64,000 bases of DNA from IMG/VR virus record IMGVR_UViG_3300025869_002060, positions 1-64,000 of that record; one strand, written 5' to 3'. The notes beneath the pieces are model-generated. The model ran no database searches, was not told where the DNA came from, and saw nothing but the letters and a program-made list of their open reading frames with translations. The position numbers and the translations under genes are program-made. Position 1 is the stretch's first letter, and every line of letters starts with the position of its first letter. Positions 1,316-57,628 of this stretch are shown here, in pieces.

Positions 1316-1428
1316 AGATACTCGCAGTTATTCTTGTTGCATTTTCAATCTCGGCTTGTTCAGTGTTAACACCTGTCAAGGTTGCTTATCAAGTTGTAAA
1401 GTTTCCAATTGATCTGGTACTTGACTAA
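1312..1428 (+). CDS. small putative lipoprotein (38 aa)
   Basis: Read manually: MKILAVILVAFSISAC-SVLTPVKVAYQVVKFPIDLVLD; signal peptide with lipobox-like ISAC; below the ORF-track cutoff. Confidence 0.55.
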   Translation: MKILAVILVAFSISACSVLTPVKVAYQVVKFPIDLVLD

Positions 1429-1590
1429 TGATTAATTGCCTGCGTTAATATGTAGCACCCTCCACTTCTAGCATAGTTCTTGCATACTGTTAACTAGTCA
1501 TTAACGATATGGTTAATGAACATGCAGTTAATTGTAAATAATTTATAATAGTAAGAATTTACAATACTAATAGGAGTTGGAGGACTTAGA

Positions 1591-8726: not shown

Positions 8727-8802
<76 letters not shown>

Positions 8803-8811
8803 AAATAAGTC

Positions 8812-8840
8812 TTGACAATACTAATAATAAATAGTATATT
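8812..8840 (+). promoter_or_regulatory. sigma70-like promoter (overlaps a TAAATA box)
   Basis: TTGACA-N17-TATATT. Confidence 0.65.
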
Positions 8841-8870
8841 ACAAGCATACTAACAGAAAGAATAGAGAAC

Positions 8871-8936
8871 ATGATCAAAACTAACACAACATATATTATT
8901 TGTTGGCCACTGCAACAGGGGTATGTTTTGACGTGA
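8871..8936 (+). CDS. putative attenuator leader peptide (21 aa, MIKTNTTYIICWPLQQGYVLT)
   Basis: Short ORF between the promoter and a terminator; Thr/Ile-rich with a single TGG codon. Confidence 0.5.
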   Translation: MIKTNTTYIICWPLQQGYVLT

Positions 8937-8958
8937 CTTTGTGATCAAAGTTATTAAT

Positions 8959-8992
8959 AAAAGCCCCTAGCATTAAGTTAGGGGCTTTTTTT
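8959..8992 (+). terminator. intrinsic terminator / attenuator hairpin abutting tRNA-Trp
   Basis: AAGCCCCTA-loop-TAGGGGCTT followed by a T-tract ending 1 nt before the tRNA. Confidence 0.8.
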
Positions 8993-9066
8993 GTGGGTGT
9001 AGTGTAATGGCAACACGGCTGATTCCAAACCAGCAAACGGGGGTTCGATTCCCTCCACCTATGCCA
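8993..9066 (+). tRNA. tRNA-Trp(CCA)
   Basis: Cloverleaf; anticodon loop TTCCAAA centred on CCA (A31-C39 mismatch); G73 discriminator; encoded CCA. Confidence 0.85.
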
Positions 9067-9068
9067 AT

Positions 9069-9167
9069 TTATCGAGCAAATTGTTGTTTACTGAGTAATG
9101 TATTGATAATGTTTTTACGGTGCTGTCTAATTAGTTTTAGATAGCAAAATAAATGAAATGTATTCAT
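9069..9167 (-). CDS. riboswitch-controlled small basic peptide (32 aa, MNTFHLFCYLKLIRQHRKNIINTLLSKQQFAR)
   Basis: AAGGAGG SD 7 nt upstream of ATG; lies directly downstream of the tandem aptamers. Confidence 0.7.
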   Translation of the reverse strand: MNTFHLFCYLKLIRQHRKNIINTLLSKQQFAR

Positions 9168-9196
9168 TTCTCACCCTCCTTGGTTAAAAGTTAGGT

Positions 9197-9245
9197 GCGT
9201 TCCTTCGGTTTCATTACCTACTTCCGTCTCTTGCGAGATGAACGA
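9197..9245 (-). ncRNA. glutamine riboswitch aptamer (glnA-type), proximal copy
   Basis: Reverse complement CGTTCA-TCTC GCAA GAGA-CGGAAGTA-GGT AATGAA ACC-GAAG-GAACGC: P1 CGUU/AACG, P2 with GNRA loop, GGAAGUA/GAAG junction, P3. Confidence 0.8.
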
Positions 9246-9252
9246 TGATAAT

Positions 9253-9299
9253 GCGTTCCTTCGGCTTAATTGCCTACTTCCGCCCATTTGGGTGAACGT
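9253..9299 (-). ncRNA. glutamine riboswitch aptamer (glnA-type), distal copy
   Basis: Reverse complement CGTTCA-CCC AAAT GGG-CGGAAGTA-GGC AATTAA GCC-GAAG-GAACGC; P2 and P3 covary relative to the proximal copy. Confidence 0.8.
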
Positions 9300-9330
9300 T
9301 GTTTAGCATACGTATTTACCATAATATTGG

Positions 9331-9359
9331 TTGACTTATTGCTAATTTAGTACTATAGT
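9331..9359 (+). promoter_or_regulatory. sigma70-like promoter
   Basis: TTGACT-N17-TATAGT, divergent from the riboswitch transcript. Confidence 0.65.
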
Positions 9360-9399
9360 ATGTATATAGTAAAAAGAGTTATGTGAAGGAGTTTTATGT

Positions 9400-9621
9400 T
9401 TGTTTGAAATGGATGCATTTTCACATGCCGTGATCGCTGTAGTTTGTTTATTTATAGCATGGTATGTTGGTAGAAATTGGGGCCGGAAAAGTTTAGCAGA
9501 AGCTGTCATTGAAACAACTCTAGATAACTTAGAACGCTCTGGGTACATATGTACCGAAACTGGTAGGAATGGTGAGAAAGAACTAATTCCTATCTCAGAA
9601 ATTTTAGCAAATAAGGAATAG
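9400..9621 (+). CDS. small membrane protein
   Basis: N-terminal TM helix; AGGAG SD upstream. Confidence 0.6.
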   Translation: MFEMDAFSHAVIAVVCLFIAWYVGRNWGRKSLAEAVIETTLDNLERSGYICTETGRNGEKELIPISEILANKE

Positions 9622-9752
9622 CAAAATGGTTACAGTTGTCACTATTTTTGGATATATTGTACTAGCTAATTTTGTTGCATCTGGCGTAATGATGGCCATT
9701 GGCAATTAATTTTAACGGTATTCTTAATAAGGTATATAAAGAGTATTAGAAT

Positions 9753-9856
9753 TCGGAAGGTGGTATTGCTTGGGTCGCTACTAGGCAAGAGAACAGGTTT
9801 GGTGATAGAACATCAGTCTTAAGTATCCATTGATGAAACAGTGGAACACCTTCCGG
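9753..9856 (+). ncRNA. candidate structured ncRNA (unassigned)
   Basis: Perfect 9-bp closing stem CGGAAGGTG/CACCTTCCG enclosing three hairpins; ends 8 nt before tRNA-Ala. Confidence 0.55.
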
Positions 9857-9864
9857 CAAAGTTT

Positions 9865-9940
9865 GGGGCCGTAGCTCAGTTGGGAGAGCGATGCCTTTGC
9901 AAGGCATAGGTCGTCGGTTCGATCCCGTCCGGCTCCACCA
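9865..9940 (+). tRNA. tRNA-Ala(TGC)
   Basis: GGGGCCG acceptor with G3:U70, loop TTTGCAA, encoded CCA. Confidence 0.95.
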
Positions 9941-9941
9941 T

Positions 9942-10015
9942 GCGGGTGTCGTATAATGGTATTACCTGAGATTTCCAATCTCATGACAGGAGTTCGATTC
10001 TCCTCACCCGCTCCA
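9942..10015 (+). tRNA. tRNA-Gly(TCC)
   Basis: GCGGGTG/CACCCGC, TGAGA-TTTCCAA-TCTCA, U73, encoded CCA. Confidence 0.95.
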
Positions 10016-10035
10016 ACCAATCCGTAACGGAATGT

Positions 10036-10112
10036 GCGCCTGTAGCTCAGCTGGATAGAGCATTTGACTACGAATCAAAAGGCCAGGAGTTCGAATCTCT
10101 TCAGGCGCACCA
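10036..10112 (+). tRNA. tRNA-Arg(ACG)
   Basis: GCGCCTG/CAGGCGC, TTTGA-CTACGAA-TCAAA, encoded CCA. Confidence 0.95.
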
Positions 10113-10141: not shown

Positions 10142-10170
10142 TTGACAATCAATAAATGATGTAGTATAGT
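10142..10170 (+). promoter_or_regulatory. sigma70-like promoter
   Basis: TTGACA-N17-TATAGT. Confidence 0.7.
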
Positions 10171-12653: not shown

Positions 12654-13268
12654 ATGTTAGCAAACCTATTAGACGGAGTCAACAGAGCTTTGGTTACTAA
12701 GTTGGTAATTTTACATACCTTAGTAATTGCTGTCTCAAACTACCTAGTAACAATTAGATTTGATTTATTTCCCGGGGCAGAATTGCCACTATTTGGATCA
12801 TTTCCACTCGCGGCCGCGGCGTTCACATTTCCGATCGTTGTTGTTGCAACTGATTTGACTGTACGGTTAATTGGTAAACAAGCAGGAAGAGCCGTTGTGG
12901 CTATGGCCATTATTCCAGCTATTGTGGCGTCGGTGCTAGTGCTATTAGCACTTGGTGACGAACACGCCTACAGAGTTGGACTTGCAAGTGGCACAGCCTA
13001 TGCAATTGGAACAATGCTTGATGTATATGTATTCCAACACATTCGTGAAAAGTATACCGAAATGTGGTGGGCGGCACCAGCAATTTCTACAGTTGTTGCC
13101 AATATCATCGACACCTATGCATTCTTCTATACAGCGTTCTATCCGGCACCTTGGGTACACGGCGTAGCGTTCAATAATACACTTACTAAAATTGTAGTAG
13201 GTCTTATTGTATTCTTACCAGCATACGGTATGTTATTATCGTATCTTAGGAATAGAGTTAAGTCTTAA
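12654..13268 (+). CDS. yhhQ: queuosine precursor transporter (YhhQ/Vut family)
   Basis: SNYLV, AFTFP...ATDL, G...D..VF, STVVANIIDT..F motifs; multi-TM; AAGGAG SD. Confidence 0.8.
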   Translation: MLANLLDGVNRALVTKLVILHTLVIAVSNYLVTIRFDLFPGAELPLFGSFPLAAAAFTFPIVVVATDLTVRLIGKQAGRAVVAMAIIPAIVASVLVLLALGDEHAYRVGLASGTAYAIGTMLDVYVFQHIREKYTEMWWAAPAISTVVANIIDTYAFFYTAFYPAPWVHGVAFNNTLTKIVVGLIVFLPAYGMLLSYLRNRVKS

Positions 13269-29527: not shown

Positions 29528-30556
29528 ATGTCAAAGAGTTTTATCAAAATTACAGACGGATCTTATCGTAACACAGACGTTAGCGGTCAGGTGTTCCGTC
29601 TTGCAGATCAATTCAAGAGCACTAACAAAGGTGCCTACGTTACAGTTTACAACGATAACAAGTTTATGGGTATGCCTGAAAAACTTCGTGTTAAGGTAAA
29701 CAACATGAAAGATTATGAGTTTGTATCTGAAGACAACTTCAACGAAGTTGTTAATACAAACGAAGAGCCGTTTGATGAAGAAAAGCGGATGTCGGAAATC
29801 CGTGAGCGGTTTGACATTCTAACAGATATGACGACAGCATGTATTGCTGGTGATATCCGTGCAATGATTGTATCGGGACCTCCAGGTGTTGGTAAGTCTT
29901 ATGGTGTTGAGAAGGAAGTTGACAAGGCTACATTGTTTGATCAACTTGCTGATCGTCCGTTGAAGGCAGAAGTTGTTAAAGGTTCAACCAGTGCTATTGG
30001 ACTGTACACTACACTTTACAAGTACAGTGATGAAAATTGCATGTTGGTTTTTGATGACTGTGACAGTGTACTTGTTGATGATGTTTGTTTGAACCTACTT
30101 AAAGGTGCATTGGACTCAGGTAAGAAACGTAAAATTAGTTGGTTGGCAGACTCCAACTTGCTACGTAGAGAAGGCGTGCCGGATTCATTTGAATTCAAAG
30201 GTTCAGTGGTTTTCATTACCAACCTTAAGTTTGAGAACGTTCGGTCTCAAAAGATGAGAGATCATCTTGATGCTCTTCAGTCACGTTGTCATTATCTTGA
30301 TCTTACTCTTGATACTATGCAAGACAAAATGCTTCGTATCAAACAGATTGCAGGTGATGGTGCCTTGTTTGAAGGTTACAACTTCAGCCAAGAGCAACAG
30401 GATTCAATCATCAAGTTCATGGAAACTAACAAGAATAAGTTACGTGAGATGAGCCTTCGAATGGCTCTTAAGATTGGTGATTTGGTTAAGAGTTTCCCGG
30501 ATCGTTGGGAAGCGATGGCTTTGGTAACTTGCGCCAAAGGTGCAAGTGCCAAATAA
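29528..30556 (+). CDS. AAA+ ATPase
   Basis: Walker A GPPGVGKS, Walker B LVFDDCD, sensor/arginine finger ALQSRC. Confidence 0.85.
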   Translation: MSKSFIKITDGSYRNTDVSGQVFRLADQFKSTNKGAYVTVYNDNKFMGMPEKLRVKVNNMKDYEFVSEDNFNEVVNTNEEPFDEEKRMSEIRERFDILTDMTTACIAGDIRAMIVSGPPGVGKSYGVEKEVDKATLFDQLADRPLKAEVVKGSTSAIGLYTTLYKYSDENCMLVFDDCDSVLVDDVCLNLLKGALDSGKKRKISWLADSNLLRREGVPDSFEFKGSVVFITNLKFENVRSQKMRDHLDALQSRCHYLDLTLDTMQDKMLRIKQIAGDGALFEGYNFSQEQQDSIIKFMETNKNKLREMSLRMALKIGDLVKSFPDRWEAMALVTCAKGASAK

Positions 30557-30607
30557 GGTGGCACCGGCAATTCCTCCTAGCTCCTAAAGCTGGTGTCATC
30601 TACCTTG

Positions 30608-30644
30608 GTGCTCTAGAGTATTTATACTCTAGGGCACTTTTTTT
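30608..30644 (+). terminator. intrinsic terminator (contains TATAAATA on the minus strand)
   Basis: GTGCTCTAGAGTA-TTTA-TACTCTAGGGCAC followed by a T-tract. Confidence 0.8.
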
Positions 30645-30654
30645 ACCATACGAT

Positions 30655-30683
30655 TTGACAATACCTTCTAGCTATAGTATAAT
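30655..30683 (+). promoter_or_regulatory. sigma70-like promoter
   Basis: Consensus TTGACA-N17-TATAAT. Confidence 0.8.
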
Positions 30684-56979: not shown

Positions 56980-57136
56980 TTGGATTAAAAACAGAGTAAT
57001 GGAACGTACTTCATGGGACGGCGGCGCATTAATTGCAGTCGGACTAGTTGTGCTATTTCTTGGACCATTTGCAAAATGGGCGGCTTATGCGGCTATTGCT
57101 TATGGTGCTTGGACTATGTGGAAAAAAGAAGACTAA
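56972..57136 (+). CDS. small two-TM membrane protein (54 aa)
   Basis: Read manually: MINWIKNRVMERTSWDGGALIAVGLVVLFLGPFAKWAAYAAIAYGAWTMWKKED. Confidence 0.65.
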   Translation: MINWIKNRVMERTSWDGGALIAVGLVVLFLGPFAKWAAYAAIAYGAWTMWKKED

Positions 57137-57217
57137 TATCTTTTGCACATGGTTTATGGGGTTCCATCCCCGTACCGGCTAGAACCCGGATTGGACTACT
57201 ATTATAGGAGAAAACAA

Positions 57218-57628
57218 ATGGGAAGACCACTAAATAAAAAGTTCTTTGGAACACCAACCCCAGCAGGAAATGAAATTAAAGTTCAGTTCCATAACGGAAC
57301 AGGTTCTGTTGCTGGATGGATTATTAAACAGGTTGGAGCAAAACGCTTTAAAGTTACTGATGGTTCAGAAATTAAAGTCTGTTCATTGGTTGATAAAGCT
57401 TCAGCGGCTATTGCCGCAGGTGAAATGACTATCACTATCAATGATGGTGGTACGGCAAGACAAGTTACTAAGATTGCCGCTAAGAAAGTTACACTTGACA
57501 CTGGTACAACAATTAACTGGGACTTTACAGGAACAGGTGATGTTGTCGAAATGGAAGAAGCTGGCGATGATGCTACTATTGACGCCATAGGCACAGACGA
57601 AGATGACTTCGAAGGTGATGACGTCTAA
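57218..57628 (+). CDS. hypothetical (candidate structural) protein
   Basis: AGGAGA SD, MGRPLNKKFFG start; acidic tail. Confidence 0.75.
   Translation: MGRPLNKKFFGTPTPAGNEIKVQFHNGTGSVAGWIIKQVGAKRFKVTDGSEIKVCSLVDKASAAIAAGEMTITINDGGTARQVTKIAAKKVTLDTGTTINWDFTGTGDVVEMEEAGDDATIDAIGTDEDDFEGDDV

What the first reader, a model, noticed from the sequence alone, without database searches (positions are those of the whole stretch)
9753..9856. Unassigned four-way-junction RNA just upstream of tRNA-Ala
Seen: a perfect 9-bp terminal stem (9754-9762 / 9847-9855) enclosing three hairpins (TTGCTTGG/CTAGGCAA, TGGTG/CATCA, CCATTG-ATGAAA-CAGTGG). It is tRNA-sized but has no TTCGA loop and no CCA. It sits in the tRNA transcript zone and would be released by RNase P cleavage of tRNA-Ala. 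Inference: a novel ncRNA or tRNA mimic, for example a decoy for anticodon nucleases.
Basis: partly seen in the sequence, partly recalled or inferred. Interest (0 to 1): 0.6.

Follow-up and report, generated by a model that had tools for sequence, protein, structure and literature searches.

The report
Optional structured RNA in phage tRNA array
A well-folded, about 104-base RNA-like element just upstream of tRNA-Ala is real, but it is an optional 113-base cassette found in only some genomes of one uncultured marine giant phage; it is not a tRNA or tRNA mimic, and its function cannot yet be shown.

Summary
The fold is confirmed. A perfect 9-bp closing stem (9754-9762 / 9847-9855) encloses three hairpins: -38.1 kcal/mol, z = -3.5, top 0.15% of 110-nt windows in the 228-kb phage genome. 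It is strand-specific (7 G·U pairs) and GC-rich (46%) like the neighbouring tRNAs and riboswitches.

The main new result is that near-identical phage contigs from other samples lack exactly 9744-9856. The element is therefore a discrete, dispensable 113-bp cassette in a tRNA array whose tRNA genes also come and go.

- **Not a known family:** no Rfam family matches, and no tRNA signal comes from Rfam's tRNA model or ARAGORN. It is not a YrlA or T4 rnaD family member.
- **No other copies:** none in its own genome or in the viral, metagenome or prokaryote collections. Three relatives at about 60% protein identity lack it.
- **No covariation test possible:** only three sequence variants exist, with four variable sites and no compensatory pair.
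- **No transcript evidence:** metatranscriptome contigs span the element but show no discrete RNA.

My best reading is an accessory ncRNA processed from the tRNA precursor, like T4 RNA C/D. One lead remains: hairpin 1 carries the same GGGUCGCUAC loop as the invariant 5' hairpin of T4 rnaD (about 2% by chance). The tRNA-mimic/decoy idea is unsupported.

The parts
9744..9856 (+). 113-bp presence/absence cassette. It is present in the window and many near-identical contigs and cleanly absent in others.
   Evidence: L035-L038 join ...TATATAAAAAG directly to CAAAGTTTGGGG (the tRNA-Ala leader); the window, L012-L016, L042-L046, L048, L051, L054 and L055-L064 carry the segment.
9753..9856 (+). Four-way-junction fold: closing stem 9754-9762 / 9847-9855, plus a terminal U9753·G9856 wobble that other variants lack.
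9766..9788 (+). Hairpin 1: 8 bp with heptaloop GUCGCUA (9774-9780). The 10-mer GGGUCGCUAC is identical to the invariant 5' hairpin of T4 rnaD.
9795..9820 (+). Hairpin 2: 3+6 bp with one bulge on each side, loop AUAGAA, three G·U pairs.
9826..9845 (+). Hairpin 3: 7 bp, loop AUGAAA (AUAAAA in the L055 lineage). One nucleotide (A9846) separates it from the closing stem.
9692..9743 (+). Diverged patch immediately upstream of the cassette. Seven substitutions distinguish cassette-bearing from cassette-free genomes, while surrounding DNA is nearly identical.
9331..9359 (+). Promoter-like site (TTGACT-17-TATAGT) that would drive ORF73, ORF27, the element and the three tRNAs. It has the same consensus as the sites at 8812-8840 and 10142-10170.
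   Evidence: No terminator-like site lies between it and tRNA-Arg.
9400..9709 (+). Two small ORFs upstream on the same strand (73 aa at 9400-9621, 27 aa at 9626-9709). They have no family assignment.
9865..10112 (+). tRNA-Ala(UGC) 9865-9940, tRNA-Gly(UCC) 9942-10015 and tRNA-Arg(ACG) 10036-10112. All encode CCA.

Best explanation
The element is an accessory, dispensable structured non-coding RNA module in the tRNA operon of an uncultured marine jumbo phage.

Shown:
- It is an independently folding, + strand-specific four-way junction of about 104 nt, with the GC signature of a structured RNA.
- It is carried on a discrete 113-bp cassette that some members of the phage population have and others lack.
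- The same array also gains and loses tRNA genes.

Inferred:
- It is transcribed from the promoter-like site at 9331-9359 together with two small ORFs and tRNA-Ala/Gly/Arg.
- RNase P cleavage at 9864/9865 sets its 3' side 8 nt beyond the closing stem, which would stop 3' exonucleases.
- A cut in the AU-rich single-stranded stretch just upstream (about 9730-9752) would set its 5' side.
- With three hairpins it would act as a protein- or RNA-binding accessory RNA rather than as a simple stabiliser hairpin.

Its partner and its benefit to the phage are unknown.
For: - Fold and statistics.
- G·U pairs: 7 of 34, so the structure exists only on the tRNA strand.
- GC content: 46%, against 20-30% in neighbouring spacers and 49-63% in the neighbouring riboswitches and tRNAs.
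- Cassette boundaries: the 3' edge of the indel coincides exactly with the last base of the closing stem.
- Persistence: the cassette is kept in three lineages, including one whose upstream ORF is only 88% identical.
- Variable sites: of the four, one is in a loop, two are G·U<->G-C switches that keep pairing, and one removes only the terminal wobble.
- Transcription context: a promoter-like site upstream and no terminator before the tRNAs. An RNA-library contig runs uninterrupted over 8981-9937.
- Precedent: T4 RNA C and D are transcribed from the tRNA region and their roles are unknown (PMC3014915; T4 annotation).
Against: - No homolog exists outside one species-level population, so there is no covariation: 0 compensatory pairs among 3 distinct sequences.
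- Low divergence inside the element (4 of 104) is no lower than in its immediate flanks (4 of about 130), so purifying selection is not demonstrated.
- About 20 other loci in the genome fold as strongly.
- The RNA-library data are assembled contigs at depth of about 5, equal to the flanks, and could be DNA carry-over. A second RNA library has no contig over 9679-9864.
- Many genomes do without the element.
Confidence: 0.4

Rival explanations
1. It is a cis-acting processing or stability element rather than a free RNA. The compact junction sits at the 3' end of the ORF73-ORF27 message once RNase P has removed the tRNAs. There it protects that message from 3' exonucleases, or it insulates pre-tRNA-Ala folding from the AU-rich upstream RNA.
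For: - Its position between two small ORFs and the first tRNA, 8 nt from the RNase P site.
- It folds independently of both flanks in a 324-nt context.
- It is dispensable, as expected for a modulator.
Against: - One hairpin would do this job, yet the element has three hairpins and a closing stem.
- Cassette-free genomes keep the same ORFs and tRNAs with only a 42-nt spacer.
- No expression data separate this reading from a free RNA.
Confidence: 0.2
2. It is a non-functional passenger: a relic of some decayed gene or RNA, or DNA brought in by illegitimate recombination, whose fold is fortuitous or decaying. It spreads only because it is linked to the tRNA array during recombination between phage lineages.
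For: - It is confined to one population, polymorphic and single-copy.
- There is no excess conservation relative to the flanks.
- About 20 other loci fold as stably.
- The diverged patch next to it shows the region is exchanged by recombination.
Against: - The combination is hard to get from junk in a 37%-GC phage: a top-0.15% fold energy, strand specificity through 7 G·U pairs, 46% GC inside 20-30% GC spacers, and an indel edge that coincides with the helix end.
- It has no similarity to tRNAs that would mark a decayed tRNA.
Confidence: 0.25
3. It is a tRNA mimic or decoy that soaks up a host anticodon nuclease or another tRNA-directed defence.
For: - Its location in a tRNA array, its size near that of a tRNA and its four-way junction.
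- Its accessory, polymorphic distribution fits a defence/counter-defence gene.
Against: - No tRNA-model hit at E <= 10.
- ARAGORN is negative down to an 80% threshold, with introns allowed, in its metazoan mitochondrial-tRNA mode and in its tmRNA mode at a 70% threshold.
- No similarity to any tRNA.
- The arm lengths (9/8/9/7 bp) and the 6-7-nt loops do not match a cloverleaf.
- There is no T-loop and no CCA, and the heptaloop has G32/U37.
- No tRNA-repair genes or Ro protein were looked for beyond TROVE, which is absent from the 228 kb held.
Confidence: 0.05
4. It is a DNA-level element: a miniature inverted-repeat mobile element or a recombination site whose 10-bp inverted repeat is a terminal repeat rather than an RNA helix.
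For: - A clean 113-bp insertion/deletion.
- An inverted repeat near both ends.
Against: - Single copy in the genome and no copy anywhere else.
- No target-site duplication or microhomology at the junctions.
- The 5' repeat arm starts 9 nt inside the cassette.
- The internal helices rely on G·U pairs, which are mismatches on the other strand and in DNA.
Confidence: 0.05

Closest known systems
T4 RNA C (species 1) and RNA D (species 2), the small RNAs of the T4 tRNA region
   Same: - They are non-tRNA structured RNAs of 119-139 nt encoded on the tRNA strand directly next to tRNA genes, with roles still unknown.
- Hairpin 1 of the element and the 5' hairpin of rnaD share the identical 10-mer GGGUCGCUAC, forming the same heptaloop and closing G-C pair. 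That hairpin is invariant in 10 T-even rnaD homologs, with a covarying A-U/G-C pair at its base.
   Different: - There is no overall homology. A covariance model of rnaD finds nothing at the element at E <= 10 in the window, and the element's model scores only the hairpin in T4 (6.6 bits).
- rnaD is a 5' hairpin plus one long irregular stem, not a closed four-way junction.
- rnaC carries a T-arm-like GGUUCGAAUCC hairpin that the element lacks.
- The T4 RNAs lie downstream of the last tRNA; this element lies upstream of the first tRNA of its group.
- The shared 10-mer alone has about a 2% chance expectation.
tRNA (Rfam RF00005)
   Same: A four-way junction closed by pairing of the 5' and 3' ends, lying in a tRNA array on the same strand.
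   Different: It is 104 nt long with a 9-bp closing stem and 8-, 9- and 7-bp arms. It has no T-loop, D-loop or CCA. No hit comes from the Rfam tRNA model or ARAGORN, and it has no sequence similarity to tRNAs.
Bacterial and phage Y-RNA-like RNAs (YrlA, RF02553)
   Same: An ncRNA of about 110 nt with a terminal stem and a multi-branched body. From memory, such RNAs are sometimes encoded by phages near tRNAs; some jumbo phages encode the Ro/TROVE partner (PMC7824862).
   Different: The YrlA model hits only true tRNAs in this genome, not the element. No TROVE protein occurs in the 228 kb held. There is no tRNA-like T-arm.
Modular early-promoter/stem-loop cassettes of T4-type phages (recalled from the literature, not checked here)
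   Same: Small non-coding modules whose presence varies between close relatives. Here tRNA-Leu, a tRNA-Thr+promoter+ORF unit and this element are all independent indels in one array.
   Different: The element carries no strong promoter. Only a 9-of-12 match straddles its 5' edge. It is far more structured than a single stem-loop.

Membership tests
tRNA / tRNA-like (RF00005, ARAGORN) | Cloverleaf that scores with tRNA covariance or heuristic models | tested here: not met
   cmscan of 9600-10000 at E <= 10 lists only the true tRNAs. ARAGORN finds 0 genes by default, with introns allowed, at an 80% threshold and in mitochondrial mode.
tRNA / tRNA-like (RF00005, ARAGORN) | T-loop (UUCRANY) and a 3' discriminator plus CCA, which every tRNA of this phage encodes | tested here: not met
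   Read from the sequence. The loops are GUCGCUA, AUAGAA and AUGAAA, and the closing stem is followed by CAAAGUUU.
tRNA / tRNA-like (RF00005, ARAGORN) | Sequence descent from a tRNA gene, for example the tRNA-Leu that occupies this slot in relatives | tested here: not met
   Local alignment against 11 tRNAs gives p = 0.25-0.93. The element and tRNA-Leu(UAG) co-occur in L042.
T4 rnaD (species 2 RNA) | Whole-RNA match to a covariance model built from 10 T-even rnaD sequences | tested here: not met
   Model R2 with filters off over the 64-kb window gives no hit at 9744-9864 at E <= 10.
T4 rnaD (species 2 RNA) | Invariant 5' hairpin with heptaloop GUCGCUA closed by G-C | tested here: met
   GGGUCGCUAC is identical in the element (9772-9781) and in all 10 rnaD homologs. 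It is the hairpin loop in both. The chance of a shared 10-mer is 0.021.
T4 rnaD (species 2 RNA) | Encoded on the tRNA strand adjacent to a tRNA gene | tested here: met
YrlA / Y RNA with Ro protein | Match to RF02553 and a TROVE-domain protein in the genome | tested here: not met
   RF02553 hits only tRNA regions. PF05731 is absent, but the genome record is only about 65% complete.
Any Rfam 15 family (riboswitches, ribozymes, sRNAs) | Score at or near a family's gathering threshold | tested here: not met
   The only overlapping entry is NsiR4 on the opposite strand at 12.3 bits, E = 4.1.
Miniature inverted-repeat transposable element | Terminal inverted repeats at the very ends, a target-site duplication, and multiple copies | tested here: not met
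   Single copy; no other copy in the public collections; no duplication at the junction, and the 5' arm lies 9 nt inside the indel.
Intrinsic terminator | GC-rich hairpin followed by a U-run | tested here: not met
   The scan finds none at 9744-9864, and the stem is followed by CAAAGUUUGGGG.
Conserved structured ncRNA (generic criterion) | Compensatory base changes across homologs | tested here: inconclusive
   Three distinct sequences: 0 pairs changed on both sides, 2 changed on one side with pairing kept, 1 terminal pair lost.
Conserved structured ncRNA (generic criterion) | Discrete transcript with defined ends | not testable with these tools
   All RNA runs that hold the locus are kept as assembled contigs, which cannot show ends or abundance.

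The most novel reading that the evidence does not exclude
The GUCGCUA-heptaloop hairpin shared with T4 rnaD is a real, ancient module. Phages as distant as T-even coliphages and this marine jumbo phage would then embed RNAs with this hairpin in their tRNA operons to engage a common conserved partner, such as a host RNA-processing or tRNA-handling factor. This element would be the first non-T-even member of the class and a handle on the function of T4 RNA D, which is still unknown.
Probability: 0.1. Interest if true: 0.7.

Novelty: new variant of a known kind. Interest (0 to 1): 0.35.

Why it matters
Phage tRNA clusters have been known since T4 to carry extra small RNAs, and the roles of T4 RNA C and D remain unknown. 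This is a natural example in an uncultured marine jumbo phage where such an RNA module is present or absent among otherwise near-identical genomes. That makes it a ready-made natural knock-out for asking what the RNA does, for example by correlating the two alleles with hosts, seasons or defence systems in time-series metagenomes. If the hairpin shared with T4 rnaD is not a coincidence, it would tie an unsolved T4 question to a broader class of phage RNAs. If the element is only a passenger, it still documents how cassette-like the tRNA arrays of large marine phages are.

Tried and rejected
- **Rfam:** scans at gathering score and at E <= 10 found nothing at the element.
- **Cultured phages:** blastn against 50,697 phage records found only the tRNAs, and chance matches of 34 nt or less for the element. 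The downstream 4 kb has no DNA match at all.
- **Closing-stem pattern in viral contigs:** the 10 hits were all chance, with no similarity between the arms.
- **Exact internal words:**
  - 23-mer of hairpin 2 in viral contigs: 0 hits.
  - Hairpin 1 in viral and prokaryote genome collections: 0 hits.
  - Hairpin 3 in metagenome contigs: only the same phage population.
- **Element model R1:**
  - Relatives at 33-63% protein identity (L017, L025, L028, L031, L033, L079): no hit.
  - Own 228-kb genome: single copy.
  - T4 tRNA region: only the hairpin, at 6.6 bits.
- **Decayed tRNA-Leu:** rejected. There is no similarity, and the element and tRNA-Leu co-occur in L042.
- **Small ORF:** a 13-codon ATG frame at 9834 loses its start codon in the L055 lineage.
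- **Y RNA idea:** rejected.
- **GUCGCUA elsewhere in the loci held:** the one intergenic case (L031) is part of a stem, not a loop.
- **RNA evidence:** metatranscriptome runs are held only as contigs. One contig spans 8981-9937 at depth 4.8, and another library has a gap over the element. Neither shows a discrete RNA.
- **Literature searches:** nothing found on phage tRNA-like decoys or tRNA-cluster small RNAs beyond the T4 RNA C/D statements.

Full report
**1. The observation**

ViennaRNA gives one dominant structure, where the minimum-free-energy fold equals the centroid:
- Closing stem: 9754-9762 / 9847-9855, nine perfect pairs, plus a terminal U9753·G9856 wobble.
- Hairpin 1: 8 bp, loop GUCGCUA.
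- Hairpin 2: 3+6 bp, loop AUAGAA.
- Hairpin 3: 7 bp, loop AUGAAA.
- Junction strands: 3, 6, 5 and 1 nt.

Several measures show that this is more than chance:
- The energy is -38.1 kcal/mol against -26.4 ± 3.3 for dinucleotide shuffles (z = -3.5, 0 of 200 shuffles as good).
- The reverse strand reaches only -24.2 (z = -1.6). Seven of the 34 pairs are G·U, so any function of the fold is at the RNA level and on the strand of the tRNA genes.
- Across all 110-nt windows on both strands of the 228-kb genome, this one ranks about 28th of 18,260. That is extreme, but about 20 other loci do as well.
- The fold is unchanged when 324 nt of context are folded.
- GC content is 46%, like the adjacent riboswitches (49%) and tRNAs (49-63%), and unlike the surrounding spacers (20-30%).

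**2. Context**

The window is the first 64 kb of a 228-kb virus contig from a metagenome, estimated to be 65% complete. It encodes ribonucleotide reductase, helicases and tail-like proteins and has no DNA-level relative among cultured phages. Sequencing runs that hold it are marine or seawater metagenomes from 14 studies.

Layout on the + strand around the element:

| Feature | Coordinates | Source |
|---|---|---|
| tRNA-Thr | 8727-8802 | |
| tRNA-Trp | 8993-9066 | |
| Two glutamine riboswitch aptamers (opposite strand) | 9194-9300 | |
| Promoter-like site TTGACT-17-TATAGT | 9331-9359 | |
| ORF of 73 aa | 9400-9621 | |
| ORF of 27 aa | 9626-9709 | |
| The element | 9753-9856 | |
| tRNA-Ala, 8 nt after the element | 9865-9940 | |
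| tRNA-Gly | 9942-10015 | |
| tRNA-Arg | 10036-10112 | |
| Next promoter-like site | 10142-10170 | |

No terminator-like site lies between 9359 and the tRNAs. Co-transcription is therefore plausible but inferred.

**3. The key new finding: a discrete presence/absence cassette**

I reached other contigs of the same phage population through exact and ≥90%-identical copies of the neighbouring proteins.
- The window, L012-L016, L042-L046, L048, L051, L054 and L055-L064 carry the element.
- L035-L038 are otherwise almost identical over the whole region but lack exactly 9744-9856. They join ...TATATAAAAAG directly to CAAAGTTTGGGG, the leader of tRNA-Ala.
- The 3' edge of this 113-bp indel is the last base of the closing stem. 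The 5' edge lies 9 nt before the stem.
- There is no target-site duplication or microhomology at the junction.
- The 52 nt just upstream (9692-9743) differ at seven positions between the two alleles, while everything else is nearly identical. The alleles therefore look old and exchanged by homologous recombination, rather than produced by a recent slip.

The same array is modular in other ways:
- tRNA-Leu(UAG) is present or absent between tRNA-Thr and the next promoter, bounded by the GGCACCA 3' ends of the two tRNAs.
- L035 carries an extra tRNA-Thr(AGU), promoter and small ORF between tRNA-Gly and tRNA-Arg.
- The element and tRNA-Leu assort independently: the window has the element only, L042 has both, and L035/L036 have tRNA-Leu only.

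**4. Distribution and conservation**

- The element is single-copy in its genome.
- Three relatives at about 55-63% identity of the neighbouring proteins (L017, L025, L079) have the syntenic tRNA array but no element. In L017 and L079, tRNA-Leu(UAG) sits in the slot directly upstream of tRNA-Ala.
- Exact-word scans of the viral, metagenome and prokaryote genome collections found only the same population or nothing.
- Only three sequence variants exist, with four variable sites:
  - T9782C turns a G·U pair into G-C in hairpin 1.
  - C9854T turns a G-C pair into G·U in the closing stem.
  - G9835A lies in the loop of hairpin 3.
  - G9856T removes only the terminal wobble.
- There is no compensatory double change.
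- In the most divergent lineage (L055; upstream ORF 88% identical in protein, about 14% DNA divergence), the element differs at 4 of 104 positions. The adjacent ORF27 and spacer differ at only 4 of about 130. The low divergence therefore reflects a recombination mosaic as much as any selection on the RNA.

**5. What it is not**

- **Not a tRNA or tRNA mimic by any test available.**
  - No tRNA-model hit at E <= 10.
  - No ARAGORN call by default, with introns allowed, at an 80% threshold or in mitochondrial mode. The 60%-threshold calls ignore the closing stem.
  - No similarity to 11 tRNAs.
  - No T-loop and no CCA, whereas all three downstream tRNAs of this phage encode CCA.
- **Not any Rfam family**.
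- **Not YrlA.** No Ro/TROVE protein occurs in the DNA held.
- **Not a terminator**.
- **Not a mobile element by the usual criteria**.
- **Not coding.** The only ATG frame, 13 codons, loses its start in one lineage.

**6. Expression**

Six RNA-seq runs hold parts of the locus, but all are kept as contigs.
- In one library a 957-nt contig covers 8981-9937 without gaps at depth 4.8. It spans tRNA-Trp, the riboswitch region, both ORFs, the element and tRNA-Ala.
- In another library, contigs stop at 9678 and resume at 9865 and 9912.
- This is compatible with read-through transcription of the filled allele. It cannot exclude DNA carry-over and says nothing about a discrete small RNA.

**7. Comparison with T4 RNA C and D**

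T4 encodes two non-tRNA small RNAs at the end of its tRNA cluster. Their roles are still unknown (PMC3014915; PMC12685909).
- The element's model picked out one short place in the T4 region, the 5' hairpin of rnaD.
- The 10-mer GGGUCGCUAC is identical in both RNAs. It comprises the heptaloop GUCGCUA, its closing G-C pair and one further G.
- In ten T-even rnaD homologs this hairpin is invariant, with an A-U/G-C/G-U covarying pair at its base.
- A shared 10-mer arises in 2.1% of shuffles.
- There is no wider homology. An rnaD covariance model does not find the element at E <= 10, and rnaD's architecture differs.
- I therefore treat the shared hairpin as a lead, not as family membership.

**8. 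Most likely mechanism and rivals**

| Reading | Weight |
|---|---|
| Accessory ncRNA excised from the ORF-tRNA precursor, analogous to T4 RNA C/D | about 0.4 |
| cis-acting stabiliser or insulator of the same transcript | 0.2 |
| Non-functional passenger of recombination | 0.25 |
| tRNA decoy | 0.05 |
| DNA-level repeat element | 0.05 |

The fold, strand specificity, composition and cassette nature are shown. Transcription, processing and any partner are inferred.

**9. Verdict**

The tRNA-mimic interpretation is not supported, and function remains untested. The element is a new, lineage-restricted variant of a known kind: extra small RNAs in phage tRNA operons. Interest is moderate-low (0.35). 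It would rise if the rnaD-type hairpin proves to be a shared module.

Noticed in passing
window 9194-9246 and 9250-9300, minus strand: Two tandem glutamine riboswitch aptamers (RF01739, 62.4 and 58.8 bits) lie inside the phage tRNA array. On the minus strand they are followed by a 32-codon ORF (9069-9167). RNA-library contigs pile up here with several variants, probably from other organisms too.
   Followed up: partly
window 57136-57220, plus strand: A full-length match to the freshwater-2 RNA motif (RF02980, 64.8 bits against a gathering score of 49.9).
   Followed up: no
L035:913-997 and L035:2100-2330; window 8802/8803 and 10015/10016: The tRNA array is polymorphic within the phage population. 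tRNA-Leu(UAG) is an indel bounded by the GGCACCA 3' ends of two tRNAs. Some genomes carry a tRNA-Thr(AGU) plus promoter plus small-ORF unit between tRNA-Gly and tRNA-Arg.
   Followed up: partly
window 30440-30660, plus strand: This is the most stable local fold of the whole 228-kb genome (110-nt window -53.7 kcal/mol; 261 nt at z = -5.5). It is a series of strong hairpins at and after the end of the ORF 29528-30556, ending in a terminator-like GGGCAC + U-run. No Rfam match reached gathering score.
   Followed up: partly
window 8812-8992, plus strand: A strong promoter-like site (TTGACA-17-TATATT) and a terminator-like hairpin with a U-run (about 8962-8992) frame a unit of about 145 nt with a 21-codon ORF. 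It ends immediately before tRNA-Trp.
   Followed up: no
L055:1207 onward and L063:731 onward: In two contigs of the divergent lineage the sequence diverges completely right after the CCA of tRNA-Ala, into two different contexts. This is either mosaic genomes that recombine at the tRNA or assembly chimeras through the conserved tRNA.
   Followed up: no
L067 (T4 69500-73500): rnaD 1554-1672 and rnaC 1409-1547, minus strand: The 5' hairpin of T4 rnaD (loop GUCGCUA) is invariant in 10 T-even phages while the apical part of the RNA varies freely. rnaC contains UAGCG twice, which is complementary to CGCUA of that loop. A possible rnaC-rnaD contact was not tested.
   Followed up: partly
genome positions about 107526, 166526, 172676, 100326, 156226 and 149801 (outside the window), and window 12876-13010: Further plus-strand 110-nt windows fold at -39 to -46 kcal/mol. 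They are possible additional structured RNAs in this phage.
   Followed up: no
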